64,000 nucleotides of DNA, taken from NCBI GenBank assembly GCA_002269645.1, contig NIVC01000412.1, positions 930,001 through 994,000 of the forward strand. The letters are read 5' to 3'. The notes beneath the pieces are model-generated. The model saw only the letters and a list, made by a program, of their open reading frames with translations. It had not been told where the DNA came from and did no database searches. Source of the DNA: Macrostomum lignano. Its lineage: Eukaryota. The position numbers and the translations under genes are program-made. The number at the start of each line of letters is the position of its first letter. Within the stretch, counting starts at the first letter, position 1. Positions 10,309-63,627 of this stretch are shown piece after piece.

Positions 10309-10347
10309 ACTGTATTAAATGCAATATCTGGCTAGAGCCCAGGGTCA

Positions 10348-13130: not shown

Positions 13131-13139
13131 ATACTGACA

Positions 13140-17272: not shown

Positions 17273-17274
17273 GT

Positions 17275-17795
17275 CGCCTGCTATCTGGGGGTGCTTGCTA
17301 TCTGGGAGAGCCTGCTATCTGGGGGTGCTTGCTATCTGGTGGTGCTTGCTATCTGGAGGTGCTTGCTATCTGGGGGTGCCTGCTATCTGGGGGTGCCTGC
17401 TATCTGGGGGTGCTAGCTATCTGGTGGTGCTTGCTATCTGGGGGTGCTTGCTATCTGGGGTGCTTGCTATCTGGGGGTGCTTGCTATCTGGGGTCGCTTG
17501 CTATCTGGGGGTGCTTGCTATCTGGGGGTGCTTGCTATCTGGGGTGCTTGCTATCTGGGAGATGCTTGCTATCTGGGGGGTGCCTGCTATCTGGGGGGTG
17601 CTTGGTATCTGGGGTCGCTTGCTATCTGGGGGTGCTTGCTATCTGGGGGTGCTTGCTATCTGGGGTGCTTGCTATCTGGGGATGCTTGCTATCTGGGGGT
17701 GCCTGCTATCTGGGGGTGCTTGCTATCTGGGGGGATGCTTGCTATCTGGGGGGTGCTTGCTATCTGGGGGGTGCCTGCTATCTGGGGGTATGCTT
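17275..17795. repeat. 17-bp minisatellite (gggtgcttgctatctgg)
   Basis: Visible array directly abutting the 23-bp array. Confidence 0.95.
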
Positions 17796-20202: not shown

Positions 20203-20294
20203 GTGAGTGCTTTGTGTGTTAACTAATGCCAGAGATTTTGTCTGGATCTTGCTACTCTGATCTTCTGGTCTGATCTGATTTCTGGGCCAGACTC

Positions 20295-20690
20295 CCAGAG
20301 TGTCAGTTGCTGGGTTAGCCTCCCAGATCCTCAGTTGCTAGGCCAGCCTCCCAGATCCTCAGTTGCTAGGCCAGCCTCCCAGATCCTCAGTTGCTGGGTT
20401 AGCCTCCCAGATCCTCAGTTGCTAGGCCAGCCTCCCAGATCCTCAATTGCTGGGCCAGCCTCCCAGATCCTCAGTTGCTGGGCCAGCCTCCCAGATCCTC
20501 AGTTGCTGGGCCAGCCTCCCAGATCCTCAGTTGCTGGGCCAGCCTCCCAGATCCTCAGTTGCTGGGCCAGTCTCCCAGATCCTCAGTTGCTGGGCCAGCC
20601 TCCCAGATCCTCAGTTGCTGGGCCAGCCTCCCAGATCTTCAGTTGCTGTGCCAGCCTCCCAGATCCTCAGTTGCTGGGCCAGCGTCCCGC
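20295..20690. repeat. 28-bp minisatellite (cctcagttgctgggccagcctcccagat)
   Basis: About 14 copies; the same unit recurs at about 22497-22565 and 51565-51750. Confidence 0.95.
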
Positions 20691-22499: not shown

Positions 22500-22680
22500 T
22501 GCTGGGCCAGCCTCCCAGATCCCCAGTTGCCGAGCCAGCCTCCCAGATCCTGAGTTGCTGGGGCCATCCTTTTAGATTCTCAGGGGTTGCTAGGCCTCCA
22601 TTCCAGACCCTCAGTCCTCAGTATCCAAGGGCGAGCATGTTCCTGAAGCCACGTCAGCAGCACTGCAACCCCAATCGCAG

Positions 22681-23467
22681 GTACTACGTGCTGATTCACG
22701 ACAGCCTAGAAGGCGACCAGCAGCGGGCGGACTCCACCCTCACCGCCATGCGCAGCACATACGGTGCCGCCGCCTGTCACCTGTTGCTCATCAACTCCAG
22801 GCCGGCGCACCTGCAGTCGGAGAGTAGCGGTGGCGCCCCCGCTCCGCCAGATCCGTGGGCTCAGCACCTGCCGCCATCCCGCCAGCTGCCGGCCAGTCAG
22901 CAACATCAGCATCAGTTTCACCAGCAGCAGCATCAGGTTGTTCAAGAGGCTTCATCGCCTACAGATCAGCAGCCGCCGCAGCATCCGCTCGACTACGGCT
23001 GGTCGTCAACCGATTCCGGCGACGTCGCTGGACCCGACGGTGGCGTCGGAGGCGGTGCGCCGGGCGGCGGCGTCGTCGGTCACGGCGCCTGGCTGAGCGC
23101 CGACGATCACAACCGACTGCGAGTGATGATTCTGGAGCTGGTCAACCGGGCTCTGATGCCGTGGGTTGAGAAGACTCTAAAGCTGTTAAACGAACAGATT
23201 GCGTCGAGAATGCGTGGCAAAGGATTCCTCGGTGGCGCTAAAAAATGGTTCTCGGTTGGCGGCGGCGGCGGCAGCGGCGGTAGCGGCAGCGGCGGCGGCG
23301 CCGGTAAAAGCGGCGGTCAGCATGCCGGCTCTGCCGGAGCCTCGTCGGTGGTGTACTCAAGCGACGCTCCGGAGCTGCAGTTGCGCCGGTACGCGGATTT
23401 GGCGTTCCTGTTCCAGCAGTACGAAGTGGCGCACCAGGCTTACCAGCAGCTGAAGAAGGATTTTCAG
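22681..23467 (+). CDS. TRAPPC8: TRAPPC8 coding exon 3
   Basis: Acceptor tcgcag; reads KYYVLIHD..LLLINSR..PDPWAQHL..HGAWLSADDHNRLR..AKKWFS..APELQLRRYADLAFLFQQYEVA..KKDFQ. Donor at 23468, phase 0. Confidence 0.93.
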
Positions 23468-23529
23468 GTTGATTTATAACTATGATTTATAATTGCGGCT
23501 AGTACTCTCAAGTCCAATCTAAAATACGC

Positions 23530-28856: not shown

Positions 28857-31460
<2,604 letters not shown>

Positions 31461-39934: not shown

Positions 39935-40261
39935 CTAGCAATCTACGCCCCCCGTTGGGGAGCCAAAGAAATGCAATACACGTTTTTTAATAAGCTACAT
40001 GTAGCCTTGAAATCTTAAAAAATCTCCTGTCAAACCTTGCAAGCCTTGACATGTCAGTAATTCCCCCCCCACAAGCTTTAACATATCAACTCCCCCCTTG
40101 ACATCTCAGCAATGCCCCAATAAGCCTTGGAAATCTAAAAATATCTGTCAACCTTCTAACCCTAAACCTAGCCTAACCCTAACCCTAACCCTAACCCTAA
40201 CCCTAACCTAACCCTAAAGCATTGAAATTTCAGTAATAATTCTCTCTAAGAGTCATTATAG
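39935..40261 (-). mobile_element. Helitron-like 3' fragment carrying (TTAGGG)n, inverted relative to 13920-14208
   Basis: The reverse complement reads ggctccccaacggggggcgtagattgCTAGt and aligns with 13940-14208; the (CCCTAA)n tract at about 40156-40216 is longer than in the first copy. Confidence 0.72.
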
Positions 40262-41520
40262 CCATGACATTAATGCACGGGTCATAGACAATCCCATGAC
40301 ATTAATGCACGGGTCATAGACAATCCCATGACATTGATGCACGGGTCATAGATAATCCCATGACATTGATGCACGGGTCATAGATAATCCCATGACATTA
40401 ATGCACGGGTCATAGACAATCCCATGACATTGATGCACGGGTCATAGATAACCCCATGACATTGGTGCAAGGGTCATAGATAATCCCATGACATTGGTGC
40501 AAGTGTCATAGATAATCCCATGACATTGGTGCAAGGGTCATAGATAATCCCATGACATTGGTGGAAGTGTCATAGATAATCCCATGACATTAGTGCAAGG
40601 GTCATAGATAATCCCATGACATTGGTGCAAGTGTCATAGATAATCCCATGACATTGGTGAAAGGGTCATAGATAATCCCATGACATTGGTGCACGGTTCA
40701 TAGATAACCCCATGACATTGGTGCAAGTGTCATAGATAATCCCATGACATTGATGCACGGGTCATAGATAATCCCATGACATTGGTGCAAGGGTCATAGA
40801 TAATCCCATGACATTGGTGTACGGGTCATAGATAATCCCATGACATTGGTGCACGGGTCATAGATAATCCCATGACATTGGTGCAAGGGTCATAGACAAT
40901 CCCATGACATTGATGTACGGGTCATAGATAATCCCATGACATTGATGCACGGGTCATAGACAATCCCATGACATTGATGTACGGGTCATAGATAATCCCA
41001 TGACATTGGTGTACGGGTCATAGATAATCCCATGACATTGGTGCAAGGGTCATAGATAATCCCATGACATTGGTGTACGGGTCATAGATAATCCCATGAC
41101 ATTGGTGCACGGGTCATAGATAATCCCATGACATTGGTGCAAGGGTCATAGACAATCCCATGACATTGATGTACGGGTCATAGATAATCCCATGACATTG
41201 ATGCACGGGTCATAGACAATCCCATGACATTGATGTACGGGTCATAGATAATCCCATGACATTGGTGTACGGGTCATAGATAATCCCATGACATTGGTGT
41301 ACGGGTCATAGATAATCCCATGACATTGGTGCACGGGTCATAGATAATCCCATGACATTGGTGCAAGGGTCATAGATAATCCCATGACATTGGTGCACGG
41401 GCCATAGATAATCCCATGACATTGGTGCACGGGTCATAGATAATCCCATGACATTGGTGCACGGGTCATAGATAATACCATGACATTGGTGCACGGGTCA
41501 TAGATAATCCCATGACATTG
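40262..41520. repeat. 32-bp minisatellite (catagataatcccatgacattggtgcacgggt)
   Basis: About 39 copies, plus 2-3 degenerate copies at about 39855-39934 on the other side of the Helitron fragment. Confidence 0.97.
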
Positions 41521-41574
41521 AATGCTAAAAAATATTTTTACTGCACTTGGTACAACTTTTTTAATTCAAACCAG

Positions 41575-42012
41575 GTAAAGCACAGTTTTGCCGCCAAACG
41601 ACTGTGCCTTGTACCGGTCTCCGTGCATCTCAACAGCAACTGCGAAACTGATCTACTAGTAAGGCTGGATGCCAGAGAGATCCAGTCTTCTTCTAGCAGC
41701 TCGCAGCAACAGCAGCAACAACAGCAACAGCAGCAGCAACATCGCCAGTTGTCATCTGGCTACGCATGGGTCGGCTTTAGCGGCAAGACCCTCACCCTGC
41801 CAGCCGGTTGCAGCCGTCAGGTCAGTCTGTGCGCCGCTTTCTCCTCCCCCGGCGTGTACGACTTGCAGACGCTGACGCTGCGGTCAGCTCAGATCAGCTC
41901 GCCAGCTGGGTCTGGCGGCAGCGGCGGTGGTAGCGGAGATCCTGTGTTTGTGCGGCACGAGGCCGCCAACCTGGTTGCCGCTCGCTACCTGATCCAGGTG
42001 GTTGACTGCTGA
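41575..42012 (+). CDS. TRAPPC8: TRAPPC8 coding exon 12 (last; stop at 42010-42012)
   Basis: Reads VKHSFAAKRLCLVPVSVHL..YAWVG..AAFSSPGVYDL..YLIQVVDC*. The 12 exons sum to 4419 nt (1472 aa plus stop) with every phase consistent. Confidence 0.9.
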   Translation, partial: VKHSFAAKRLCLVPVSVHLNSNCETDLLVRLDAREIQSSSSSSQQQQQQQQQQQQHRQLSSGYAWVGFSGKTLTLPAGCSRQVSLCAAFSSPGVYDLQTLTLRSAQISSPAGSGGSGGGSGDPVFVRHEAANLVAARYLIQVVDC

Positions 42013-43279: not shown

Positions 43280-45310
43280 GTAAAGGGTTTAGGATAGGGT
43301 GAGATTTTTAGAAGCTGCATCAAGGGTATGAGATCTACAGTGAGATTTCGGAGGCTCCATCAAGGGTGTGAGATCTAGGGTTAGATTTTGAAAGCTGCAT
43401 CAAGGGTATGAGATCTAGAGTAAGATTTCTGAAGCTGCATCTGGGGTATCAGATCTAGGGTGAGATTTGATTTCTGAAGCTGCATCTGGGGTATGAGATC
43501 TAGGGTGAGATTTCTGAAGCTGCATCTGGGGTATCAGATCTAGGGTGAGATTTGATTTCTGAAGCTGCATCTGGGGTATGAGATCTAGGGTGAGATTTCT
43601 GAAGCTGCATCTGGGGTATGAGGTCTAGGATGAGATTTCGGAAGCTGCATCTGGGGTATGAGATCTAGGGTGAGATTTCGGAAGCTGCATCTGGGGTATG
43701 AGATCTAGGGTGAGATTTCTGAAGCTGCATCTGGGGTATGAGATCTAGGGTGAGATTTCTGAAGCTGCATCTGGGTATCAGATCTAGGGTGAGATTTGAT
43801 TTCTGAAGCTGCATCTGGGGTATGAGATCTAGGGTGAGATTTCTGAAGCTGCATCTGGGGTATGAGATCTAGGGTGAGATTTGATTTCTGAAGCTGCATC
43901 TGGGGTATGAGATCTAGGGTGAGATTTCTGAAGCTGCATCTGGGGTATCAGATCTAGGATGAGAGTTCGGAAGCTGCATCTGGGGTATGAGGTCTAGGAT
44001 GAGATTTCTGAAGCTGCATCTGGGGTATGAGGTCTAGGATGAGATTTCGGAAGCTGCATCTGGGGTATGAGATCTAGGGTGAGATTTCGGAAGCTGCATC
44101 TGGGGTATGAGATCTAGAGTGAGATTTCTGAAGCTGCATCTGGGGTATGAGGTCTAGGATGAGATTTCGGAAGCTGCATCTGGGGTATGAGATCTAGGGT
44201 GAGATTTCTGAAGCTGCATCTGGGGTATGAGATCTAGGGTGAGATTTCGGAAGCTGCATCTGGGGTATGAGATCTAGGGTGAGATTTCTGAAGCTGCATC
44301 TGGGGTATGAGGTCTAGGATGAGATTTCGGAAGCTGCATCTGGGGTATGAGGTCTAGGATGAGATTTCTGAAGCTGCATCTGGGGTATCAGATCTAGGGT
44401 GAGATTTGATTTCTGAAGCTGCATCTGGGGTATGAGATCTAGGGTGAGATTTCTGAAGCTGCATCTGGGGTATGAGATCTAGGGTGAGATTTGATTTCTG
44501 AAGCTGCATCTGGGGTATGAGATCTAGGGTGAGATTTCTGAAGCTGCATCTGGGGTATCAGATCTAGGATGAGAGTTCGGAAGCTGCATCTGGGGTATGA
44601 GATCTAGGGTGAGATTTCTGAAGCTGCATCTGGGGTATCAGATCTAGGATGAGAGTTCGGAAGCTGCATCTGGGGTATGAGGTCTAGGATGAGATTTCTG
44701 AAGCTGCATCTGGGGTATGAGGTCTAGGATGAGATTTCGGAAGCTGCATCTGGGGTATGAGATCTAGGGTGAGATTTCTGAAGCTGCATCTGGGGTATGA
44801 GGCCTAGGATGAGATTTCGGAAGCTGCATCTGGGGTATGAGATCTAGGGTGAGATTTCGGAAGCTGCATCTGAGGTATGAGATCTAGAGTGAGATTTCTG
44901 AAGCTGCATCTGGGGTATGAGGTCTAGGATGAGATTTCGGAAGCTGCATCTGGGGTATGAGATCTAGGGTGAGATTTCTGAAGCTGCATCTGGGGTATCA
45001 GATCTAGGGTGAGATTTGATTTCTGAAGCTGCATCTGGGGTATGAGATCTAGGGTGAGATTTCTGAAGCTGCATCTGGGGTATGAGATCTAGGGTGAGAT
45101 TTGATTTCTGAAGCTGCATCTGGGGTATGAGATCTAGGGTGAGATTTCTGAAGCTGCATCTGGGGTATCAGATCTAGGATGAGAGTTCGGAAGCTGCATC
45201 TGGGGTATGAGGTCTAGGATGAGATTTCTGAAGCTGCATCTGGGGTATGAGGTCTAGGATGAGATTTCGGAAGCTGCATCTGGGGTGTGAGATCTAGGAT
45301 GAGATTTGAT
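43280..45310. repeat. 40-bp satellite (gagatttctgaagctgcatctggggtatgagatctagggt) with a 45-bp variant
   Basis: About 50 copies, with a higher-order repeat of roughly 600 bp. Confidence 0.97.
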
Positions 45311-46790: not shown

Positions 46791-46900
46791 ATGGTACATG
46801 GTTCACAGTTTTCAAGCCTCAATTTTCAACGCCTGTAACAAATTGCGAATTGCAGCCGGCTGAGCAGTATATAATTGTCTAAACAGCTACATTGCGTCAC

Positions 46901-48037
46901 ATGCTTCTCACAATAGCCCTGTTCCTGCTGTGCTGCTCGCTCATCCTATTGATCCGCGCTGCCGCCTCCCTGGCCGATCGGCGGGGAGTCTGCAGCTTCG
47001 CAGTTGAAGAGCAGCAGCAGCAGCAGAAGCAACGGCCAGAAGAAGACCAGAAGGAAGCGGAAGATCCTGGAATCAAGCTGCTCGATCCGCAGGTTGCAGC
47101 GGCTGTGGCCGAACTGGCCGAGCTGGTCTTTCATCGGCAGCTGGCCGGTGAAGCGTGGTGTCCGGCCAGCCTGTCCAGACGTTTTCGTCGCCTTATTCAG
47201 CGGTTCCTGTTGGCCGCGGCCGTTCGGCTGGCTCGGGTCGACTGGCACCGCCTGTGCCATCGCCGACTGCTGCCGCTGGCCGCGGCGCACGCTCTCCAGC
47301 TTCGCCGATGCCAGCAGAGCCGACAGCAACTCGGACGGCCGGCTCGGCCAGCCGCCAAGCTGCCCGTGCCGGAGTTCCTTCGCAACGACGCCGACGAGCG
47401 TCGACTGCTGCAAGCCGTCGCCGGCCGCCTGCTGGACAGTCTGGACTCCGAGGCCGCCGCTCTCGGCCGCTGCCTGCCTGTGCGTGTGGCTTTGACTGAC
47501 TTGCTGGCCCGGTACGTCCTCCAGCCGGCCATGGACTCGGCCACCTGTCCGGAAGTCCTCGCCCGTCTCGTCTCCGGCCACTTGGCCGAGCGCAGTCGTC
47601 GGATTCGATACGAACGAATTGCGGCCGGCAGTTTTGAAGATTTCGTACGGCAAATTTTACAATGCGAATCGGCGCCAGCTCTGCGCCAATTGCGCGCCAG
47701 TGTGCGCGCCGAAATTTTGCACGCTAGCGCGCTGCGAACTCTGCAGCGTCAACAGCAGCAAGGCGCCCAGGCTGCTGTACAGTATTCATCTAAAGCTGGC
47801 CAGCTGATGAACCGCGATTTGCGACGCTACCTGAACCAGCTGGGCCAGTGCGAGGCGCTCTGCCAGCAGCGGCTGGCTGGCCTGCTGTCAGACAAGTCCG
47901 TCGGAGTCGGCGGCATTGGCGATGGTGGCGGAGGCGGCGGCTGTGACGACGGCTCAGGCGAGTCGTACAGTAGAGAATTTGACGATCTCGAAGACGTGGA
48001 AGCGGAGCGAGCGTCTTTGCAAGTTTACTCACTGCAG
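46901..48037 (+). CDS. SNX25: Sorting nexin-25-like exon 1 (TM segment and PXA domain)
   Basis: Hydrophobic N-terminus; PXA-like ..DERRLLQAVAGRLL..RCLPVRVALTDLLARYVLQP; SNX25-type SFEDFVRQILQC..LRQLR..RDLRRYLNQL..C. GTAGGG donor at 48038. An upstream exon cannot be excluded. Confidence 0.82.
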
Positions 48038-48108
48038 GTAGGGTGCGAAACCGAACTCTGTTCAATCGATTAACACTCACTTAACAACACTACACCTTTA
48101 ACTGCCAG

Positions 48109-49326
48109 GTAATCCTTGAGCACGAAGCCTTCCGAGCTGAATTTCGCAGATTCGTGTCGCAGCGACAACCTGACGAAGCCGTCCTGTTGGACTACTGGGC
48201 GGCTGCAAAACGACTATCGGAGCTCGCTGCTGCCGCTGACTGCAGCTCAGAACTGGCTCTGCGAAGATTATACGATGAGGCCTGGCAGCTGTACAAGCGC
48301 TACCTACATCGAGGCACTTCACAGTTAGTCTACATCGCTCCCGCAACCCAGAGTGCCGCTGTAAATTTTAACTTAGCTCGGGATTTTCTGCTTGGCCGTT
48401 CATTAAGCGTCGAGGGTTTTGAAGCGATTGCGCGAGATGTGGCCAACTGCGCCGAGCAGTTCTGGTACTGCACCTTCGTTATTAGTCCGCAGTTTGAGAA
48501 TTTCTGTAGGCGAGGCTTGACACCTGACAATGCTCTCGCTGACGGAGATAACTCTTCTTCTTTGGCATCTACTTATCTGTCGACGTCCGCATCATTAGGT
48601 ACAATATCCGCATCCGTAAAGTCGACATCCGCATCGTCAGGGATGACATCCGCATCCGTTAAGTCAACATCCGCATCGTCAGGGATGACATCCGCATCCG
48701 TTAAGTCAACATCCGCATCGTCAGGGATGACATCCGCATCCGTTAAGTCAACATCCGCATCGTCAGGGATGACATCCGCACCCGTTAAGTCAACATCCGC
48801 ATCTGTTAATTCAACATCCACATCTTCAGGGACAACATCCGCATCCGTTAAGTCAACATCCGCATCTTCAGGGATGGCATCCGCATCGTCAGAGATGACA
48901 TCTGCATCCTTTATGTCAACATCCGTATCATCAGGGATGGCGTCTTTAGCATCAGCTCCCGCAGAGACAAAATCCTCATTACCAGCAGCGTCATCTGCGG
49001 CATTGTCAAAACTTGCGACACTTCCGCCTGACGATCCGTGCAGCGATGCCCTCGCTGCTCTGGACGCGCGCATTCGCCGCAAACAAGTTCAGCTCGACGC
49101 GTTTCAACGACACAACGTTGACTGCGGCGACGACATTGATGCCGCCGTGTTTCCATCGGCCGCGTTCAGCGATCGTCTGGCCGCGGAGCTGTCCGGCTTG
49201 CATCTGGAGCGGAGGCGGCTGATCGCCTATGCTGAAATCGCCGATGCCTGGATGGAGCGTCTTGGTCGATGGCGAGTTCGGCTGTTGACCGACGCTCGCA
49301 GCGGCGCAAGTTCGGTGCTGTTTCAG
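48109..49326 (+). CDS. SNX25: SNX25-like exon 2 (RGS domain, Ser/Thr repeat, coiled coil)
   Basis: After a 71-nt intron, reads VILEHEAFRAEF..LLDYWAA..LYKRYL..FWYCTFVISPQF..; later DAWMERLGRWRVRL, like the SNX25 W..LG.W motif. Confidence 0.85.
48585..48930 (+). repeat. Coding 42-bp minisatellite (TSASSGMTSASVKS)n
   Basis: In-frame repeat inside SNX25-like exon 2, built from 21-bp subunits starting acatccgcatc. Confidence 0.93.
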
Positions 49327-49392
49327 GTTGGTACAAATGGCCGATTGTAAAGTTTGAAATCAACTTTTAAATTGTGCCGCGCGTTTGCACAG

Positions 49393-49853: not shown

Positions 49854-50174
49854 GTGCGAAAAAGTTTTCATTTGGATGTTTGACGGCTCAGAAAGTCATT
49901 TCCGTTATTAAATTCATAGATTTATAAAAAGATTATCAGCTTTGCTAAGACAGATGGTTGGCTCGGTTTTTAGGAAATTAAACAGGCTATTTTTATGCTT
50001 GGTACTTATAGAACACCTGTTAGATATATTATGCCTCATTATAGTGACGTATTTTTTATGAGTTGTGCTAACTGCGTTCACCAGGGAAATTCAGGAGAGG
50101 CATACGGATTCACCTATCAAAATAGAATATATTTGCAATTACACCTCCTGCAACTCATCTATCTTAACACAATT

Positions 50175-51060
50175 ATCCGTTCACCAACCATCCGTTCACC
50201 AACCATCCGTTCACCAATCCTCCGTTCACTAATCCACTATTCACTAATCCTCAGTTCACCAATCCTCAGTTCATTAATCCCCAGTTCACTAATCCCCAGT
50301 TCACTAATCCCCAGTTCACCAATCCTCAGTTCACCAATCCTCAGTTCATTAATCCTCAGTTCATTAATCCCCAGTTCACCAATCCTCAGTTCACCAATCC
50401 TCAGTTCACCAATCCTCAGTTCACCAATCCTCAGTTCACCAATCCTCAGATCACTAATCCTCAGTTCACCAATCCTCAGTTCACCAATCCTCAGATCACT
50501 AATCCTCAGATCACTAATCCTCAGTTCACTAATCCTCAGATCACCAATCCTCAGATCACCAATCCTCAGATCACTAATCCTTAGATCACCAATCCTCAGA
50601 TCACCAATCCTCAGATCACTAATCCTCAGATCACCAATCCTCAGATCACCAATCCTCAGATCACCAATCCTCAGATCACCAATCCTCAGATCACTAATCC
50701 TCAGATCACCAATCCTCAGATCACTAATCCTTAGATCACTAATCCTCAGATCACCAATCCTCAGATCACCAATCCTCAGATCACTAATCCTCAGATCACT
50801 AATCCTCAGATCACTAATCCTCAGATCACCAATCCTCAGATCACCAATCCTCAGATCACTAATCCTCAGTTCACCAATCCTCAGTTCAACAATCCTCAGT
50901 TCACCAATCCTCAGATCACCAATCCTCAGATCACTAATCCTTAGATCACCAATCCTCAGTTCAACAATCCTCAGTTCACCAATCCTCAGATCACTAATCC
51001 TCAGATCACTAATCCTCAGATCACTAATCCTCAGATCACCAATCCTCAGATCACTAATCC
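50175..51060. repeat. 15-bp minisatellite (tcaccaatcctcaga)
   Basis: Fills the 3' part of SNX25-like intron 3, up to the acceptor. Confidence 0.96.
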
Positions 51061-51083
51061 TTCATCATTCGTCAATCCTCCAG

Positions 51084-51555
51084 GCAGCAGCCGCCGGAGC
51101 CGCTCGCCGACGCCGTCTTTCATCTGGCCGACGCCGTCTTCGACCTCGCTGGCTCGTCCAGCGCGCCCCGCCGCCTGCTGCACCTGTTCGCCATGCACGC
51201 CGGCGGCCAGACCACCGCAGAGCGCTGGTGCCGCGACCTCCTGGCGGCCTGGACGGGGCCGGAGGCTTCGCTGTCCTACTTGAGCGCGCTGCGGGACACC
51301 CTGTGGCCACCAGCGGAGGCAGCGGCCTCTCGTCATGACGACTTCGAGCAGCGGCGACAGGACGGCTCAGAATCGGCGCGGTGCCTGCAGCTGATGCAGG
51401 CCAGCCTCCCGGAGCCGGCGCTGCTGCTGCTGGGCGAGCGGAGCGCCAGGCAGGGGGTGGCCTTCCTGCACTGGATGTTCACCTGCAGCCAGGTGGCTAA
51501 TAAGGCCCTGCTGTACGGCTGGCTCTTGGCTCTCTTGGAGGAGGTCGCTCTATAG
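51084..51555 (+). CDS. SNX25: SNX25-like exon 4 (PXC/Nexin_C domain; stop at 51553-51555)
   Basis: Reads ..PLADAVFHLADAVFDL..YLSALRDTLWP..LPEPALLLLG..ANKALLY..; the four exons total 3288 nt, in frame. Confidence 0.82.
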
Positions 51556-52792
51556 GTTTGTACCCTCCCAAATCCTCAGTTGCTGGGCCAGCCTCCCAGA
51601 TCCTCAGTTGCTGGGCCAGCCTCCCAGATCCTCAGTTGCTGGGCCAGCCTCCCAGATCCCCAGTTGCTGGGCCAGCCTCCCAGATCCTCAGTTGCTGGGC
51701 CAGCCTCCCAGATCCCCAGTTGCTGGGCCAGCCTCCCAGATCCTCAGTCACTAAGCTGGCTGAAGTCCCTACTCTGCAATTTCATCTGTGTCAGGACTCA
51801 CTTCGATTGGTCTTCTTTTTTATTCGATACATCAATATTTTAAGGTTTTTTGCTTTTACTCTTTATAATTCCAAGTATTATTGTTGAACTTTTCGTTCGA
51901 TAGAATTATAAATTACACTTTAGTCATGCTTTTGTAGTCTTCCATATATTTGCGAACAATTTTAGCGTTTTCATTATAATTTCACATTCATCGGTTTGTC
52001 TGACATCATTGATCGCTATACTCGTAGTTATGTGCCAAATTTTCTCTAATTAAAACGCTGCAATTTATCTAGCAAATTTTCATTAACAATTATTTTCATA
52101 ATTAAATTATAATAGGTTGTACAGCAGAATTCTGTCAGAACACTTTGCCTGAGTATTTAATTAATTTCCAAGCTAACAAAAAGGTAATTTTGTTGTTTTT
52201 TGACGTAGGAAATGGTTGACGTGTGTCTCCTGCAGATTGCCGCGTTGATGAGGCAGCTGGTCCTGGCATTAGCGCCAGCGGATTATCGGGCGCTAATCCC
52301 CTGCTTGTCCGATCAGCATGGGCTGGGGAGTCCGTGGGATAGACAGATAGATCACTGCGACTCCGTACCCCCGCTGGGGAATTTCCGGCTGAGAAGCAGA
52401 GAGAATGCTATGCATTCTATATGTTTAGATAAAAAACATGGAATTGGATGTGGCACAACTGCCGAGGCAAGATACGGCACGGTAAGCCCCTGTCGTGACA
52501 GCTGTGGCGGAGGTTCTGCTGATACAAAATTTATACATACTATAAATAATAATAATGAAGCAGTCTTTGCTGATACTTTCGGTTCGACTCGCTGAAAACA
52601 TTGAACAAAAACACATTGAAACAATTTTCTCGCGCTTCAGCTTTGAGCATTGGACGTCGAGTAGGGATCCGTGTCTGTTTATCAGCTTTCTTCTCAATTC
52701 TGAGATGAGAAGTCAGCATGTCTGACTGTGATTCCACAAACAAAGGGGGGCAGACACTGTGAGTAAGACACAGAGTGCATGTGGATTTGCCA

Positions 52793-56087: not shown

Positions 56088-57416
56088 TCAGTCATCTTCC
56101 ATGGCTGGCACTTCAGCCGAGATCAGCGCGGCCACTACCTCGCGGCTGTCCCGGTCGGCCACCTCAGTCGACGGCGCAGCCTTTGCAGCTGTTGTTGTCA
56201 TCCGCAGCATCGGCAGCTCTGCTGACTGCTCCGCCTCGGGTCTCCCCTGCTGACGTCTTCGGGCTCTCTTGCCATCGCCGTTGACGCTTGAACCGTTGGA
56301 CGACCTGCGCCACGGACAAGCGTTCATCACGCGGCGTCTGAACGCAGTTGAGGAGATAAAATAAGCCAGAAAGTTGGTGGCATTGTTGGCGAACATAAGC
56401 GTCTTCAGAGCATTGTTTGTGACACCGCTGATCGAGTTTTTATCGCCGTAGACTTTCAGCTTCTGACCAATGGAAGCTGGCAAGGTGGTGATAATGTGGA
56501 TCACGGTGAGCACAGCCAGGATCTTCATGATACTCTCCGGCTTGCGACGAGCAGCCTCTCGTTTCTTCTCAACGTTGCTGGCTGCGTTTCCAGCCGATGC
56601 GCCCTGACGCTTCGGGTTGAGAACCTCCTGGTCAGCCGCTTTGCCCTTATCGGCCCGCTGGTTTGTGGCAGTCGGCTGAGCATGGCGACGCATTGCAGCG
56701 CTCTGACGTCGCATGGCGGTATAGATGTAGATGTTGCAAAACAGCAGAATAGTGTAGGGCAGAATCAGGTAGGTGACCATGTCCAGGTTGATGAAGAACT
56801 TCGCAAAGTCCTGATTGTAGTCGCACTTGTCCACCAGCTGGTAGTCAATGCCAGCTTCCATCTCGGCCAGGTCTGTCTCGTTCTGTTCTGTCAGGCTGGA
56901 GTTGAGCAGCCGGTAGCATTTGCTGGTGTGCAGAAAGAATGACAGCGGCATATTTTTAACCAGCAGCGCCAGCACCATCGCGCCGAACGACAGGCTAAAG
57001 TTGCGAGTAGTCAGAATCTGCTGCACCCGGTACGGGAACGCAACCACGACGAAGCGCTCAACTCCGATGGCGCACAGGGTGTACACAGCGACGTCGCTGA
57101 CCGTGGCCACTACTGGCTGGTGGAAGCGGCAGATAAAAGGGTGCAGATCGCGCAAATCAATGTTAAACGTCTCCCGGATCCAGTAGCGCACCACCGCTAG
57201 GAGGAGGACTCCGCTGTCACTCAGCGCAAGGCAGACCATCAGGAAGCGAGTGGTGACTCGGTTGGACCTCTCCGTGCCTTGGATGTAGGCCGCCGCCAGG
57301 TTGCAGGGCACGCCGCCAACAATGATGACGGCGCCTAAGAGACGAATTACCCACTCAGCGATCTCCGAAGTGTTGTCTTCTGGCCGCTGACGACAGGCTC
57401 CAACTCTGTCATACAT
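56088..57416 (-). CDS. Intronless class A (rhodopsin-like) peptide GPCR, FMRFamide/myosuppressin/Rho-L type, 442 aa
   Basis: Seven hydrophobic segments; LALSD in TM2, ERF at the DRY position, P..N in TM5, TTLP in TM6, NNATNFLAY in TM7; Cys residues in ECL1/TM3 and ECL2. Confidence 0.93.
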   Translation of the reverse strand: MYDRVGACRQRPEDNTSEIAEWVIRLLGAVIIVGGVPCNLAAAYIQGTERSNRVTTRFLMVCLALSDSGVLLLAVVRYWIRETFNIDLRDLHPFICRFHQPVVATVSDVAVYTLCAIGVERFVVVAFPYRVQQILTTRNFSLSFGAMVLALLVKNMPLSFFLHTSKCYRLLNSSLTEQNETDLAEMEAGIDYQLVDKCDYNQDFAKFFINLDMVTYLILPYTILLFCNIYIYTAMRRQSAAMRRHAQPTATNQRADKGKAADQEVLNPKRQGASAGNAASNVEKKREAARRKPESIMKILAVLTVIHIITTLPASIGQKLKVYGDKNSISGVTNNALKTLMFANNATNFLAYFISSTAFRRRVMNACPWRRSSNGSSVNGDGKRARRRQQGRPEAEQSAELPMLRMTTTAAKAAPSTEVADRDSREVVAALISAEVPAMEDD

Positions 57417-58890: not shown

Positions 58891-61385
58891 TGTCTGTGAC
58901 TTTAAATTGGTGTCTGAGACATCCGATGGGTGTCTGTGACATCATCAGTTCTTGGGTTAATTTACAGGAGGCATACCGAGTTTAGCGATATTTAAATACG
59001 CAATTAAATTCGTCGAAAAAATAACTCCAACATCACGCTCCTCCCAGCAACTACACGAGCCAATGCAAGGGGTTGCACTTCTGCCGCTGAGCAAGGCATG
59101 GCATAGATCACCCCAACGGTTTGCATAAGCCACTAAGTTCTCGGATGAGAACTAGCCGAAGATGCCTGCCTTTATTTGTCGGCTTCACCCGGCAGATAAA
59201 TCAAGCAGCGCGGGCGTTAAACCTCTGGCTAGGGGATCTACTAAGATTCAGCATTGGTACATATGTGTATATACTGCAACTTTCTGAAAGCTGGCTCTTC
59301 CTCTTCAAAGTGTCGGAGAAAAAGTTTCAAATTTCTCAGCTGACTCTGCAGTCTGCCTGCCTCTCTCCCGCGGGAAGTACTGAATTATATAAATTCGACT
59401 AAAGCGCTGCATGCCGCCGCACCATCCAGCTTCACCCCCCCCGCATCTGCTGTCAGAGACTGGGCACTAAAGCTGGTGTGCAATCTTTCTTTTTCTCTCT
59501 ACACCCTAAAGCCGCGCTGGGCTTGGTCAGAAAATCGATTAGAAGAACACCCCGTCTGACTGGATACTGAGAGATGAGGGAGAGGAGCGAGGCTATAGCT
59601 GAGTCTCCTTCCCAGACCAGCAGGTTGTGGAGTGGCAAAGTTAATGCAACAGTCTAAAGCTGTTCTAAGTCTGCTAAAGCAGAGTAGGACGCAGTCAGTA
59701 TAATTGCATGCAAAAGAGGGAGTGGGCGAATCTCCTGTCCCAATTCTTAACGACCAAAAAAGTTTAAACTTTCCAGCGGCTTTGTGGTTGAGACTTAAAT
59801 CTGGCTGAATAACAGTCCGTACTTTACACTTAAAAGTAGTTCGTGGTGGCTAAATTAAAAAATGCCACCAGCTGTGAATGCAGCTATGTGGATAATTTCT
59901 CTCGACATTTTTATTGTAGTACTCTCGTAGTTTTGCTAAAAGCTAAAACATCAACACTAGCTTTTACAAGCGCCGCCAGCCACACGCTCGCAAGCGCATG
60001 CATTTTTCACGGGCCATGCATTTAAACGCATGGCCCAGTAAAATACAATACATTAAAATTTAATCTATTAAACTGTTTCTAGAGTACTTTTGAGGCATTG
60101 ATTTAACTAAACGAAGCATACTACTATCGTACTACTAATAACATGGCCGGTCAAAATTTACGAAATTCAACTCAAATTTTATTTCCCTACGGTACGTATG
60201 CCCCACCCACCTATCAAGTATCAAGCTGCATGTTTCACACATGAATATTGCTGTCTTTCAATGTCTACAGCTAGGCTCCGATAGAACTGTGTAGCATGCC
60301 CTCGATGCTATCATTATTGTCATTATTAGCAAAAATCATCAAAGCCAAAACAGAAAAGGATTTCATATTTCATATCGCCCAATTCGGTCACTCAACCGCG
60401 AGGTAACGGATCAGGGCGGATCAGGGCGGATGCAATATAAAGCATACCTTTAATCAAAGCAACCATCCAACAACAACGCAATTTCGCCCACAGGAATAAG
60501 AAAAATTATATATTAAACGCAGAAACCGAGGTTGATGCAGCACCAAGAGTCAGACAACGGTGAGTAATTAATAGCTAGCAATATGATAATGTCATCCGGT
60601 ACTGTTCCGCTTTTTCAAAGCTTCCTGTTCCCGAGATTCAAATTTGCGTTCAAATTTTTACGATTAATAAAACAAAACCAATAAGATAGGTACTTATAAA
60701 GTGAATTTAGCATGGGGGTCGCGCTTTTCACTGCGGGCGAGCCGGTGTTTATTTCATTCAACACCCCCCCCCCCTGATCGGCGTGCGCGCCCTGCTGCCC
60801 CACTAGCTAAATATGGAATAGAACTGCTCCTTACTTATCTAACTGTTTCTTGGCACAAGTCCAGATTGTCTTCTAAAAGCAAAACTCGCAGCTTCTAGCG
60901 CAAAGTTTTAGAATAAGAAATCTATGATGAACGGCAACTAAAGCAGGTAAGAAAAAGGAATCCCAGACACCATCGCGCTAGAGTCGCAATCACAGGCAGC
61001 TGTGCATTCGTCAGATTATATTTCAAACGCAGGTACGTAAAAATTGCTTGCAAACGAGTAGAGACAACACAATTTGAAGTGAATATTTGAGCGTGCTCAA
61101 AGACGATGAACTTTGATACGAGTATTTACAATGAAATTTAAACGTGTGCGATAATTACAAGTTAGTAGCTCAACAGACCAGCCATGAGAAGTTGCTCGGG
61201 ACCATGCAGGTCGTAGCCCACCCCGGGTTCGAATCGCCCTTTGAGACGCGCATTCCGAAGCGCATATACAACAATAAAAGACAAAAACATGCAAATGCAC
61301 GGCAAGCCAGCGCCAAAATTTGAAGAAAAAATATCAGCAAAGATCAAAACTATACAAAATGTTTTATCCAAGAAAAATTTGCACG

Positions 61386-61961
61386 TCACAGCCACGCACT
61401 GTCAGCCTCGGGTGCGCAGTCCACCGCGACGCTCACAGCCGAGCTGTAGTACACGGGCTGCTCGGAGTCGCACAGCAGCTTGTAGATTCGCACGTCTCGT
61501 CGGACCTCCCTGCAGCTGTGCGGACACGACACGCCCAGCAGGAAGGTCGGCAGCCTCGGCCGCGTCACGCCTCCGGCGTCCAGCTCGTAGGTCGGAGCGC
61601 AAAGCCTCGGCTTGGCGTCGCTCGCTTCGAACAGCGAGGTCGGCAGTCGGCGATTCGTCTCGGAGACGTTGAAGCTCAGCTTGTGCCGAACGATGACCTG
61701 CTGCAGCTCCGAGAGCAGCTGCGACAGCTCCAGCTCCTTCGTCTGGTTGCTTAGCGACCGCTTCTCGACCAGGAAATCGACGCCGCTTCGACGGCGACTC
61801 GGCGACCAGCCGAGCGACAAGACGGCGAACTCGCGAGGACAAGCGAACTCGGCGAAGCTCGAGTTGACGCTGTCGAAGATCCGGCCGGATCCCGGCGAGG
61901 AGCTGGCGAGCGGCACCAGCAGGCCGCATATAAAAAGTATTAAAGTCGCCGCTGAAGTCAT
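61386..61961 (-). CDS. Secreted cystine-knot-like protein A, 191 aa
   Basis: ATG at 61961 (the track start at 62000 is GTG); signal peptide MTSAATLILFICGLLVPLASS; 6 mature Cys; paralogous to 62966-63541; TATAAA on the - strand about 75 nt upstream. Confidence 0.85.
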   Translation of the reverse strand: MTSAATLILFICGLLVPLASSSPGSGRIFDSVNSSFAEFACPREFAVLSLGWSPSRRRSGVDFLVEKRSLSNQTKELELSQLLSELQQVIVRHKLSFNVSETNRRLPTSLFEASDAKPRLCAPTYELDAGGVTRPRLPTFLLGVSCPHSCREVRRDVRIYKLLCDSEQPVYYSSAVSVAVDCAPEADSAWL

Positions 61962-62031
61962 TTTTTGGGCACAAAGAACTATCGCGAGGGAAGGTTGCAC
62001 AAATTCTATTAAAGATTAGTCTGCTGTGCGT

Positions 62032-62039
62032 ATTTATAG
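62032..62039 (-). promoter_or_regulatory. TATA box of secreted protein A
   Basis: The - strand reads tataaata about 70-80 nt upstream of the ATG. Confidence 0.5.
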
Positions 62040-62965
62040 TGCCCTGGCTGGTTCCCACCCACGGGTTTTGTCTGTCTGGGGGCTGTGGCCCTAATTAATA
62101 AACTACCCGATTCTAACAATATATATTTTCGACCGCATCATAGGACTGAGCTGACGCCCCCGCCCCCATTCAGTTGCTATTTTTGAACATTTACTGCGCT
62201 AAATTTTTAGCCAAAAGTTTCAGCGATTGGACGCTACTGACTGACAGCTGCGCCTAAAGCATTTCGCTGTCCGATGGAAGCAGAAAAGAATTCCGGTGTG
62301 CTTCCAATTGCTAATTATAGCTTTGAAAAGTTCCTTATTTAATCTTGAAATATAATGGCGCCTTTGTTTTGCTCTTTGCGTACACAATTTCACCTCAGAT
62401 GCTTGGTTCTTAAGACACTTCCTTGTTTTATTGCCAATTCAGAAGTATAGATCTATATACATTATCTACGCCTTAGTTCCTACGGGAAAATTAATGAACT
62501 GGTTTGTGCAGTGCCAGGGTGGCGGGGTGAGTGTTTAAACCCCGTCGTTGTCTGTCATTTTGTGCCAAATTCGTGTTTTGTCGCTTGTCCTTTGTCGCTG
62601 GAAACACAAAAAAATAAAAAAACTTTTCCTTTTTTGTTGAGCTCTTTTATTGAGCAGAGCTATTTAAAATGGGCGATGCATTTCAAAGAAATCCAAATAC
62701 GAGTCGTTATATAAAACATTAGCAAAAAGTTTTGAGCTTCAAGTTTCTTGCTGCCACAATTCGGTTCAAGGAAGTTCGCGGAATTAATGGTACAGTTTGT
62801 ATGTCAGCATTACCAAACATTCGAGCCTGTACAGGTATTGATTAAATTCATGCAAGAAGTGGTTAAAATAATAAAACTAAGTACTACTCCTAGATTACGC
62901 AAGATTAGATGGTGGCGTATAAAATAAAACAAAATATTTCAGCTGCAAGAAGTCCGTTAAGTGCG

Positions 62966-63541
62966 TTATCCGAAAAATTCGGTAACGCGATCCTTCGGAG
63001 CGCAGTGCACTCCAACGCCGACGAGCTTGGAGGCGTAAGCGACACTCCAGCTTGCCTTATCATCAGTGTCCGGATTCTCGCAGATCAGTTTGTACACCGG
63101 CACGGAGCGCATTACCGGAATGCAGTCGCCAGAGCAGGTGACATTCAGCAGGTAGGTTGGGACCGAGTAGCTCGACGAATACCTGATAAATCTGTATGTT
63201 GGCGGGCAGGCTCGGTTTGTTGCTTTGCTCGCGATTGAAATCTTTGTGAAATTTATCGGGTTCGTCTCAGTTTGATTGAAATCGACCCAGTTTTTGGCCA
63301 GAGTTCTCCTCAGCTCGGCGAGCAGGTCGTACGCCTCCAGAGTGGTCTGGTTCACCTGCGGTCGTTTCAGCTCGATCAGAAACGGGCCGTCGGGCACGCC
63401 GCCAGTCAGGTTGCACAGGGACTCGACGCGGCTGCCACTTGCCTCCTCAAATACTCGACCGCTACTTGACAGCTGCTGACTGTGGAGTACCAAGCTTGCC
63501 ATCAGCAGGGCTACATACATGTACTGCAAGCGGTGCAACAT
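62966..63541 (-). CDS. Secreted cystine-knot-like protein B, 191 aa
   Basis: ATG at 63541 (the track start at 63568 is TTG); hydrophobic signal YMYVALLMASLVL; 6 mature Cys including CSGDC (C-x-G-x-C); paralogous to protein A. Confidence 0.85.
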   Translation of the reverse strand: MLHRLQYMYVALLMASLVLHSQQLSSSGRVFEEASGSRVESLCNLTGGVPDGPFLIELKRPQVNQTTLEAYDLLAELRRTLAKNWVDFNQTETNPINFTKISIASKATNRACPPTYRFIRYSSSYSVPTYLLNVTCSGDCIPVMRSVPVYKLICENPDTDDKASWSVAYASKLVGVGVHCAPKDRVTEFFG

Positions 63542-63620: not shown

Positions 63621-63627
63621 TTTTATA
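63621..63627 (-). promoter_or_regulatory. TATA box of secreted protein B
   Basis: The - strand reads TATAAAA about 80 nt upstream of the ATG, a spacing similar to paralog A. Confidence 0.5.

What the first reader, a model, noticed from the sequence alone, without database searches (positions are those of the whole stretch)
61386..63541. Tandem pair of orphan secreted proteins with an unusual cystine-knot cytokine-like Cys pattern
Seen: two intronless genes, both 191 aa from the first ATG, both with a signal peptide and TATA box. They share SGR(I/V)F, an N-terminal Cys, FL(V/I)E, NQT, LL.EL, FN.(S/T)ETN, R.C.PTY, PT(F/Y)LL.V.CxxxC, V.R.V.(I/V)YKL.C and V.V.CAP, while the rest is highly diverged, implying an old duplication under constraint. 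Established: a CP.Y..P..L...C..C..V.V....C..V.C.C layout marks the IL-17/PTTH/trunk/noggin/Spaetzle cystine-knot cytokines, and C-x-G-x-C (CSGDC in B) is the knot ring motif. Unusual: the first Cys of the terminal C-x-C is missing in both, and an extra Cys sits in the N-terminal region, so the disulfide topology must differ from the canonical knot. Basic sites (RRRS/EKR in A, LKR/LRR in B) suggest proprotein processing. Inference: an undescribed lineage-specific ligand family, possibly heterodimerising.
Basis: partly seen in the sequence, partly recalled or inferred. Interest (0 to 1): 0.75.

Follow-up and report, generated by a model that had tools for sequence, protein, structure and literature searches.

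The report
Divergent IL-17-like cytokine gene pair, flatworm
Two neighbouring, unannotated genes in a Macrostomum flatworm genome encode secreted proteins that are most likely very divergent members of the IL-17 cytokine family, which the papers I searched do not describe in flatworms; the resemblance is statistically real but too weak to prove membership.

Summary
Two intronless minus-strand ORFs of 191 aa each (A 61386-61961, B 62966-63541) are paralogues: 35% identity, E 4e-21. Each has an N-terminal signal-like hydrophobic segment, host-like codon usage, a TATAAA box and all the listed shared motifs.

The window is Macrostomum lignano or a near-identical genome.

No database homologue exists at normal thresholds:
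- Pfam gives nothing.
- The 5.8-billion-cluster search gives nothing.
- HMMER against 1.84 billion representatives gives only junk repeats.
- AlphaFold models are low confidence (pLDDT 42 and 53), and Foldseek finds nothing significant.

An IL-17 profile built from 53 published IL-17 domains aligns collinearly with the C-terminal ~80 aa:
- hhalign P = 1e-4; 0 of 400 column shuffles and 0 of 350 Cys-fixed shuffles reach the real score.
- NGF, VEGF-A, TGF-beta1 and noggin controls give P 0.07-0.57.

All six conserved Cys map to known IL-17 positions: the N-terminal Cys, Cys1, 2 and 4, the loop Cys, and Cys5. Cys3 and Cys6 are missing, which is the published "T1C" two-disulfide type. So the "unusual" pattern is a known IL-17 variant.

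What differs is a near-deleted beta2-beta3 loop (3 residues against 11-24) and extreme divergence (8-12 bits against 46-99 for genuine IL-17s from a left-out phylum).

Verdict: probable new, highly divergent member of a known kind. Moderate confidence and moderate interest.

The parts
61386..61961 (-). Gene A coding sequence: 191 aa plus stop, no intron needed
   Evidence: ORF list and sequence; GC3 0.83 and the codon-position identity pattern; paralogue of B at E 4e-21
62966..63541 (-). Gene B coding sequence: 191 aa plus stop, no intron needed
   Evidence: GC3 0.69
61899..61961 (-). Gene A predicted signal peptide, about aa 1-21 (MTSAATLILFICGLLVPLASS)
   Evidence: The only strongly hydrophobic segment (KD 2.96), with small residues at -3/-1. 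This is inferred; no dedicated predictor was available.
63479..63541 (-). Gene B predicted signal peptide, about aa 1-21 (…YVALLMASLVLHS)
   Evidence: KD 2.45, LHS|QQ; inferred
61407..61613 (-). Gene A IL-17-like C-terminal domain, aa 117-185. Cys121 = Cys1, Pro138 = RxP proline, Cys146 = Cys2, Cys150 = Cys4, Cys164 = loop Cys, Cys182 = Cys5.
   Evidence: Concordant hhalign, HMMER and MAFFT alignments to 53 IL-17 domains
62993..63220 (-). Gene B IL-17-like C-terminal domain, aa 108-183. Cys112, Pro128, Cys136, Cys140, Cys154 and Cys180 are the counterparts of the gene A residues.
   Evidence: In the MAFFT --add alignment the loop Cys of B is offset by B's 8-residue insertion, but it pairs with A Cys164 in the A/B alignment.
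62033..62038 (-). TATAAA box 77 nt upstream of the gene A ATG
63622..63627 (-). TATAAA box 86 nt upstream of the gene B ATG

Best explanation
A and B are a tandem pair of old paralogues in Macrostomum lignano. They encode very divergent IL-17-superfamily cytokine-like ligands.

Each is made as a precursor of about 19 kDa, with a signal peptide, an N-terminal region of about 90 aa that is partly helical and glycosylated, and a C-terminal beta-strand domain of about 80 aa.

The domain is held by the two-disulfide 'T1C' form of the IL-17 cystine knot. In A numbering, the predicted pairs are:
- Cys1-Cys4: 121-150
- Cys2-Cys5: 146-182

The Cys3/Cys6 pair is absent. The remaining N-terminal Cys41 and loop Cys164 are predicted to pair with each other. 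By analogy with the interchain N-terminal-Cys/loop-Cys disulfide of IL-17A/F (own knowledge), that bond may link the two chains of a dimer.

The inferred mode of action is secretion, dimerisation (homo- or A/B hetero-) and binding to an IL-17-receptor-like (SEFIR) receptor.

What is shown: the genes, their paralogy, secretory-type features, and a collinear, above-chance match to IL-17 that includes non-Cys motifs.

What is inferred: the fold, the disulfide pairs, dimerisation, the receptor and the biological role.
For: 1. Profile-profile match. The hhalign comparison of A+B against 53 published IL-17 domains covers the whole domain. Full-length: P 8.7e-4. C-terminal block: score 26.1, P 1.1e-4, probability 56%. 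None of 400 column shuffles reaches this (maximum 24.6), and the reversed sequence scores 12.3.

2. Not just cysteines. With Cys columns fixed and all other columns shuffled, 0 of 350 reach the real score (maximum 19.6). With Cys masked to Ser the match still scores 14.9, P 0.026.

3. HMM scores. An IL-17 HMM run with --max and Z=1 gives B 12.2 bits (1e-5) and A 8.4 bits (1.6e-4) on the domains. Shuffles equal or exceed these in 2 of 3000 (B) and 5 of 3000 (A).

4. Three aligners agree on the register: CxPTY = CPW.Y; the RxP proline, invariant in 53/53, sits 8 residues before Cys2 exactly as in IL-17; C(I/R)(P/E)V.R.V.(V/I)YKL(I/L)C parallels oyster CEPVYRPVRVLSRTGNC; V.V.C = V.VGC.

5. Cys5 without Cys6 occurs in 10 of 53 known IL-17s. 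It corresponds to the published T1C type (PMC11087794).

6. The full-length alignment to 22 invertebrate IL-17 precursors is collinear. It runs signal peptide, N-terminal CxEP Cys, Cys1, Cys2, Cys4, loop Cys, Cys5 (weak, P 0.033).

7. Controls. Single-sequence comparisons give NGF P 0.27, TGF-beta1 0.27, VEGF-A 0.07 and noggin 0.34-0.57. The best single IL-17s give P 0.004, in the correct register.

8. Architecture. Size (about 190 aa) and layout match invertebrate IL-17 precursors in the S1 dataset.

9. Secondary structure. The AF2 model of the B domain is all-beta in the positions aligned to IL-17 strands.
Against: - Pfam IL17 gives no hit, even on the isolated domains at E<=10.
- Genuine IL-17s from a phylum left out of the model still score 46-99 bits, against 8-12 bits for A and B. 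By the family's usual criterion these proteins are not members.
- hhalign probability is only 23-56%.
- AF2 confidence is low (pLDDT 42 and 53). Foldseek finds nothing significant: IL-17A and neurotrophin-3 appear only at E about 9.
- The Cys2-Cys4 spacing is 3 residues, against 11-24 in all 53 known domains. The alignment therefore needs a deletion of about 15 residues, and the alternative reading (CxxxC = Cys2/Cys3) cannot be excluded.
- IL-17 was chosen for testing from a short list, so P values should be multiplied by about 5.
- No receptor, transcript or orthologue evidence is available.
Confidence: 0.6

Rival explanations
1. A and B form a Macrostomum-specific, fast-evolving secreted protein family with no common ancestry with IL-17, for example a gland, adhesive, epidermal or seminal-fluid product. 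The Cys spacing and the few shared motifs would then be convergent or chance.
For: - No homologue at any standard threshold.
- IL-17 HMM scores are 4- to 10-fold lower than those of real IL-17s from left-out phyla.
- No confident fold.
- The Cys2-Cys4 spacing lies outside the known range.
Against: - A collinear match over the whole domain, with 0/400 and 0/350 shuffles reaching it.
- Signal survives Cys masking.
- The invariant RxP proline and its exact 8-residue spacing to Cys2 are present.
- All six Cys land on conserved IL-17 positions.
Confidence: 0.25
2. A and B belong to another cystine-knot ligand family, such as noggin/noggin-like, neurotrophin/Spaetzle, PDGF/VEGF or TGF-beta, or to the Trunk/PTTH/CFSH branch, rather than to IL-17 proper.
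For: - By eye, noggin has a similar CP.LY…WPRYVKVGSC…C layout, and noggin itself aligns weakly to the IL-17 profile (P 0.012).
- PTTH and CFSH are reported to cluster with IL-17 (PMC11087794). They have pro-regions cleaved at basic sites (own knowledge), which is reminiscent of the conserved KR here.
- Foldseek's weak list contains PDGF-B and neurotrophin-3.
Against: - hhalign against human noggin gives P 0.34-0.57; NGF 0.27; TGF-beta1 0.27; VEGF-A 0.07. All are worse than many single IL-17s.
- No Pfam hit to Noggin, NGF, PDGF, TGF_beta or Spaetzle.
- The terminal CxC/CxCxC and a complete ring are absent.
- PTTH, Trunk and CFSH were not tested because no verified sequences were at hand.
Confidence: 0.1
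3. The ORFs are not expressed genes: chance ORFs or decaying pseudogenes.
For: - No transcript evidence.
- The products are absent from the protein collection under any start codon.
- No canonical AATAAA lies within about 385 nt downstream of A.
Against: - Two intact 191-codon ORFs that have diverged to 35% identity while keeping frame, length, six Cys and about ten motif blocks.
- Third-position identity is the lowest of the three positions, and GC3 is host-like.
- TATAAA lies at a sensible distance upstream of both.
Confidence: 0.04

Closest known systems
Invertebrate IL-17 cytokines of the 'T1C' disulfide type (Cys1/4 + Cys2/5, no Cys3/6), e.g. C. elegans F25D1.3 and T22H6.1, Lottia 169526/159302, oyster EKC32654, amphioxus 117645
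   Same: - Signal peptide, an N-terminal region of about 90 aa with a Cys, and a C-terminal domain of about 80 aa.
- The motif series C-P-x-(W/Y), RxP then 8 residues to Cys2, Cys4-x-P/E-V…V-x-(V/I)-(L/Y), a loop Cys, and V-x-V-x-Cys5 followed by a non-Cys.
- Total length of about 190 aa.
   Different: - Only 3 residues between Cys2 and Cys4, against 11-24.
- 'CxPTY' has an extra residue between Cys1 and Pro.
- Trp is replaced by Thr-Tyr.
- The sequence is so divergent that Pfam IL17 does not detect it (8-12 bits against 46-99).
Vertebrate IL-17A / IL-17F
   Same: - Adjacent paralogous genes whose products form disulfide-linked homo- and heterodimers through an N-terminal Cys and a loop Cys (own knowledge).
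- B has 'RSVPVY', resembling the vertebrate 'NSVPIY' motif (motif 3 in PMC4517768).
   Different: - Vertebrate IL-17s (T2 type) lack Cys1/Cys4 and keep Cys2/5 + Cys3/6. A and B keep Cys1/4 + Cys2/5.
- Dimerisation of A and B is untested.
PTTH / CFSH (arthropod IL-17-related hormones) and Trunk
   Same: Highly divergent cystine-knot ligands that standard domain models miss. PTTH and CFSH are reported to cluster with IL-17. Their precursors have a pro-region and basic cleavage sites (own knowledge).
   Different: Arthropod-specific and not compared here by sequence. Cleavage at the KR of A and B is unproven, and in B the KR is followed by Pro.
Noggin / planarian noggin-like proteins
   Same: Secreted, about 200 aa, with a C-terminal Cys-rich half that starts with CP.LY and …P.Y.K.G.C.
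   Different: - hhalign P 0.34-0.57 against human noggin.
- No Pfam Noggin hit.
- Noggin has 9 C-terminal Cys ending in C-x-C-x-C, whereas A and B have 5 and end in C-A-P.

Membership tests
IL-17 (Pfam PF06083 / IL-17 superfamily) | Detected by the curated family model at its gathering threshold | tested here: not met
   No Pfam hit for the full proteins or the isolated domains at E<=10. My own 53-sequence HMM gives 8-12 bits, against 46-99 for IL-17s of a left-out phylum.
IL-17 (Pfam PF06083 / IL-17 superfamily) | Above-chance profile similarity, collinear over the whole domain | tested here: met
   hhalign P 1.1e-4. None of 400 column shuffles and none of 350 Cys-fixed shuffles reach the real score. 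HMM shuffles equal or exceed it in 2/3000 and 5/3000. Below conventional homology thresholds (probability 23-56%).
IL-17 (Pfam PF06083 / IL-17 superfamily) | Conserved knot cysteines in a recognised pattern (T1A/B/C, T2 or T3) | tested here: met
   Cys1, Cys2, Cys4 and Cys5 are present and Cys3 and Cys6 absent, which is T1C. This depends on an alignment that needs a deletion of about 15 residues.
IL-17 (Pfam PF06083 / IL-17 superfamily) | Invariant proline of the RxP motif, 8 residues before Cys2 | tested here: met
   Pro is present in 53/53 known domains and in A (P138) and B (P128) with identical spacing. The Arg is kept in A and is Ser in B.
IL-17 (Pfam PF06083 / IL-17 superfamily) | beta2-beta3 loop of usual length between Cys2 and Cys4 | tested here: not met
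   3 residues, against 11-24 (median 17) in 53 domains.
IL-17 (Pfam PF06083 / IL-17 superfamily) | Two-hairpin cystine-knot fold | tested here: inconclusive
   AF2 pLDDT 42 and 53; the model is all-beta in the aligned region. Foldseek best E is 0.7-9, with IL-17A at rank 5 (E 9.4) and IL-17F at rank 41.
IL-17 (Pfam PF06083 / IL-17 superfamily) | Secreted precursor with a signal peptide | tested here: met
   A single N-terminal hydrophobic segment, (-3,-1) sites and conserved N-glycosylation sequons. This rests on a heuristic, not a dedicated predictor.
IL-17 (Pfam PF06083 / IL-17 superfamily) | Dimeric ligand that binds an IL-17R (FN3 + SEFIR) receptor | not testable with these tools
   No access to the rest of the M. 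lignano genome or proteome, and no paper in the library mentions SEFIR or IL-17 in flatworms.
Noggin | Noggin domain with 9 C-terminal Cys ending in C-x-C-x-C | tested here: not met
   No Pfam hit; hhalign P 0.34-0.57 against 1m4u_A; A and B end in C-A-P.
Canonical growth-factor cystine knot (NGF, PDGF/VEGF, TGF-beta) | Ring of C-x-G-x-C plus C-x-C with a third disulfide threaded through it | tested here: not met
   There is no C-x-C, and G is present only in B. hhalign P is 0.27 (NGF), 0.07 (VEGF-A) and 0.27 (TGF-beta1).
PTTH / Trunk / CFSH | Sequence similarity to these IL-17-related hormones | not tested

The most novel reading that the evidence does not exclude
A and B found a flatworm-specific branch of cystine-knot ligands. 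It is either derived from IL-17 but rebuilt, or not IL-17 at all.

In the rebuilt case the beta2-beta3 loop is deleted, only two knot disulfides remain, and a pro-region may be cleaved at the conserved KR. That cleavage would leave an odd Cys for an interchain bond. The ligand would also have switched receptor or function, as PTTH did when it came to use Torso.

In the other case the fold and disulfide topology are new.
Probability: 0.2. Interest if true: 0.65.

Novelty: new member of a known kind. Interest (0 to 1): 0.45.

Why it matters
IL-17 is described as the only interleukin family shared by vertebrates and invertebrates. Its surveys cover cnidarians, molluscs, annelids, nematodes, arthropods, echinoderms and chordates. 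None of the papers I could search reports IL-17 ligands, receptors or SEFIR adapters in flatworms.

Macrostomum lignano is a transgenic, regenerating model flatworm. A pair of IL-17-like ligands there would:
- give an entry point to cytokine signalling in flatworm immunity, wound response or neuromodulation;
- extend the known limits of the family, with the shortest beta2-beta3 loop and a sequence invisible to Pfam;
- show that 'orphan' secreted genes in fast-evolving genomes can hide old cytokine families.

If the IL-17 reading fails, the pair is still a conserved, unannotated secreted gene family, but of only local interest.

Tried and rejected
- Pfam on the full proteins, C-terminal domains and N-terminal regions: only a spurious 9-residue match.
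- Word-indexed search of 5.8 billion clusters with B and with the A+B profile: nothing.
- HMMER of the A+B profile against 1.84 billion representatives: four hits, of which the two retrieved are translated tandem repeats with 5 and 9 matched stretches, and the other two are long multi-stretch matches of the same pattern. Rejected.
- PDB sequence searches: weak activin-receptor ectodomain matches (E 0.04-0.13), driven by Cys and a different fold class. Rejected as chance.
- AF2 on full-length A and on the B domain with 2-sequence alignments: low confidence. Foldseek against PDB on both: nothing below E 0.7.
- Exact-product look-ups for A and B under three start choices, and for the neighbouring GPCR: not on record. 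So no orthologues, paralogues or transcript-derived contigs could be fetched.
- tblastn for further copies in the window: none.
- Promoter and UTR similarity between A and B: none.
- Rfam and tRNA scans: nothing.
- My first reading, that the window is a Macrostomum species other than M. lignano (70% identity), was wrong. The aligned blocks are about 100% identical and the rest is a gene-model difference.
- Noggin looked similar by eye but failed the same test that IL-17 passed.
- Full-length IL-17 precursor alignment: collinear but only P 0.033. Used as weak support only.
- dN/dS was not attempted, because at 35% identity synonymous sites are saturated.
Full report
**What is there.**
Two minus-strand ORFs sit at the reported coordinates: A at 61386-61961 and B at 62966-63541. 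Each encodes 191 aa from the first ATG. They are paralogues, with 35% identity over 170 aa and E 4e-21. There is no third copy in the window.

**Are they real genes?**
Several features point to real coding genes rather than chance ORFs:
- GC at third codon positions is 0.83 (A) and 0.69 (B). The neighbouring GPCR, TRAPPC8 and PXA-domain exons have about 0.70.
- Identity between A and B is lowest at third positions (0.49/0.49/0.40).
- 31 of the 62 identical residues use different codons.
- Flanking DNA shares nothing, so the duplication is old.
- Both genes have TATAAA 77-86 nt upstream of the ATG.

Each protein has one strongly hydrophobic N-terminal segment with plausible signal-peptidase sites. 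Each has two positionally conserved N-glycosylation sequons (NQT and N-x-S/T), six conserved Cys and a conserved KR. No transcript evidence could be obtained. The products are not in the protein collection under any start codon.

**Whose genome.**
The window is an animal genome. It contains:
- a LINE with endonuclease, reverse transcriptase and RNase H domains;
- a multi-exon TRAPPC8 gene;
- a PXA-domain gene;
- an intronless rhodopsin-type GPCR;
- dozens of 15-50 bp minisatellite arrays.

The TRAPPC8 exon is essentially 100% identical, over more than 130 aligned residues, to UniRef proteins of Macrostomum lignano. The 70% figure in the table comes from a gene-model difference.

**Orphan status.**
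- Pfam finds nothing, including nothing for IL17, Noggin, NGF or Spaetzle, on the full proteins or on isolated domains.
- The word-indexed search of 5.8 billion clusters finds nothing with B or with the A+B profile.
- A full HMMER scan of 1.84 billion representatives returns four hits. The two I retrieved are translated tandem repeats, and all four are long proteins matched in many short stretches.
- PDB sequence searches give only weak, Cys-driven matches to activin-receptor ectodomains.

UniRef M. lignano proteins are in that collection, and the window is M. lignano itself. If that set is the complete proteome, these genes are unannotated there.

**Testing the cystine-knot idea.**
By eye the C-terminal half resembles IL-17, so I tested that resemblance formally. 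I took 53 IL-17 domains from the S1 dataset of PMC4517768, covering nematodes, an annelid, molluscs, Daphnia, sea urchin, Ciona, amphioxus and vertebrates. From these I built an alignment and an HMM.

- HMMER with filters off gives B 9.8 and A 5.8 bits for the full proteins. The isolated domains score 12.2 and 8.4 bits. Composition-preserving shuffles equal or exceed these scores in 2/3000 (B) and 5/3000 (A).
- hhalign of the A+B profile against the IL-17 alignment gives one alignment spanning the whole domain. For the full proteins P is 8.7e-4.
- For the C-terminal block the score is 26.1, P is 1.1e-4 and the probability is 56%. None of 400 column shuffles reaches this (maximum 24.6), and the reversed sequence scores 12.3.
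- The signal is not only cysteine spacing. With the five Cys columns fixed and the rest shuffled, 0 of 350 reach the real score (maximum 19.6). With Cys masked to Ser the score is still 14.9, P 0.026.
- Other cystine-knot ligands, with sequences verified against PDB chains, do worse. NGF gives P 0.27, TGF-beta1 0.27 and VEGF-A 0.07. Noggin gives 0.34-0.57. Single IL-17 sequences reach P 0.004 in the right register.

**What the alignment says.**
HMMER, hhalign and MAFFT --add agree on the register. In A numbering:

| A residue | IL-17 position | Conservation in the 53 known domains |
|---|---|---|
| Cys121, in R.C.PTY | Cys1 of the invertebrate 'CPW.Y' motif | C in 38/53 |
| Pro138 | proline of RxP, 8 residues before Cys2 as in IL-17 | P in 53/53 |
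| Cys146 | Cys2 | C in 50/53 |
| Cys150 | Cys4, in front of the beta3 motif | C in 37/53 |
| Cys164 | the loop Cys ('RTGC') | C in 18/53 |
| Cys182, in V.V.C | Cys5 | C in 50/53 |
| Pro184 | Cys6 position | C in 43/53 |

For Cys4 and beta3, compare oyster CEPVYRPVRVLSRTGNC with B CIPVMRSVPVYKLIC and A CREVRRDVRIYKLLC.

Ten of the 53 known IL-17s also have Cys5 without Cys6. These include both C. elegans genes, two Lottia genes and an amphioxus gene.

Chen et al. (PMC11087794) classify IL-17 knots as follows:
- T1A: disulfides 1/4, 2/5 and 3/6
- T1B: lacks 2/5
- T1C: lacks 3/6
- T2: the vertebrate type, lacks 1/4
- T3

A and B fit T1C. A collinear full-length alignment to 22 invertebrate precursors also puts the N-terminal Cys41 on the conserved N-terminal 'CxEP' Cys of mollusc and echinoderm IL-17s. 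That alignment is weak, at P 0.033.

All six conserved Cys are therefore accounted for by known IL-17 positions. The predicted pairs are 121-150, 146-182 and 41-164. The last pair is possibly interchain, by analogy with IL-17A/F (own knowledge). It also reverses one detail: it is the second Cys of the terminal C-x-C that is missing, not the first.

**Why membership is not proven.**
- The curated Pfam model does not see these proteins.
- When I leave a whole phylum out of my HMM, its genuine IL-17s still score 46-99 bits, while A and B score 8-12. That yardstick is partly circular, because the dataset was collected with the Pfam domain. PMC11087794 does note that many IL-17 relatives are too divergent for standard procedures.
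- The alignment needs a deletion of about 15 residues. Cys2 and Cys4 are 3 residues apart, against 11-24 (median 17) in all 53 known domains. The alternative reading, in which C-x3-C is Cys2/Cys3, cannot be excluded. It would leave Cys1 and Cys3 without canonical partners.
- Structure prediction did not settle it. With only two sequences, AF2 gave pLDDT 42 for full-length A and 53 for the B domain. The model is all-beta where IL-17 strands align.
- Foldseek against PDB found nothing below E 0.7. The cystine-knot hits PDGF-B, neurotrophin-3, IL-17A (rank 5, E 9.4) and IL-17F (rank 41) appear only among insignificant matches.

**Most likely mechanism.**
The proteins are secreted, N-glycosylated cytokine-like ligands of the IL-17 superfamily. 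They are stabilised by a two-disulfide knot. They probably act as disulfide-linked dimers, perhaps including an A/B heterodimer, in the way adjacent IL17A and IL17F do in vertebrates. They would signal through an IL-17R-like receptor.

The genes, their paralogy, their secretory features and the above-chance IL-17 resemblance are shown. The fold, disulfide pairs, dimerisation, any processing at the conserved KR (followed by Pro in B, which is unfavourable for furin-type cleavage, own knowledge), the receptor and the biological role are all inferred.

I put this explanation at about 0.6. The rivals are:
- an unrelated lineage-specific secreted family, about 0.25;
- another cystine-knot family, including PTTH, Trunk and CFSH, which I could not test, about 0.1;
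- non-genes, about 0.04.

**Novelty.**
IL-17 surveys in the held literature sample many phyla but no flatworms. No paper in the library links IL-17 or SEFIR with flatworms, planarians or Macrostomum, apart from incidental co-mentions.

I therefore rate this as a probable new, extremely divergent member of a known kind. Its one real structural peculiarity is the near-absent beta2-beta3 loop. It is moderately interesting, and worth a deep-alignment and structure follow-up in a tractable model flatworm.

Noticed in passing
window 22469-23479 (and exons up to 41512-42012), + strand: A TRAPPC8 (Trs85/foie-gras) gene with long introns full of minisatellites. The first large exon is about 100% identical over more than 130 aa to UniRef Macrostomum lignano proteins, which identifies the source genome. 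The UniRef gene models differ from the ORF here.
   Followed up: partly
window 6568-11910, - strand; arrays at 4832-6466 and 12380-13133: An intact-looking LINE ORF2 of 1246 aa with endonuclease, RT and RNase H domains, and a 520-aa upstream ORF with no Pfam hit, presumably ORF1. The element is flanked on both sides by arrays of the same 23-bp minisatellite unit, as if it had inserted into one array.
   Followed up: partly
window 40156-40218: A short interstitial telomere-like repeat, (CTAACC)n, the complement of TTAGGG. It has about 10.7 copies and lies inside a TRAPPC8 intron.
   Followed up: no
window-wide, e.g. 28859-31460, 14790-17275, 43295-45307, 20282-20688 and 51564-51748: Very dense tandem repeats. 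There are 47 TRF rows, including (TGTC)x650 and many arrays with 15-50 bp units. The same 28-bp unit occurs in two arrays 31 kb apart. Several long 'ORFs' are simply translated repeats, for example the 'extensin-like' ORF 49995-51338, which is a 15-bp repeat at 50179-51061.
   Followed up: partly
window 56088-57416, - strand: An intronless 442-aa rhodopsin-family GPCR (7tm_1, E 3e-19), about 4 kb from gene A and on the same strand. Its exact product is not on record in the assembly collection. No link to the A/B pair was established.
   Followed up: no
window 46892-49350, + strand: An exon with a PXA domain (sorting-nexin type), followed by a 398-aa ORF with no Pfam hit.
   Followed up: no
window ~61200-61260: A GGGTTCGAATCGCCC stretch resembling a tRNA T-arm lies about 130 nt downstream of gene A's stop. 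Neither ARAGORN nor Rfam calls an RNA gene there. It may be a tRNA-derived repeat fragment or chance.
   Followed up: partly
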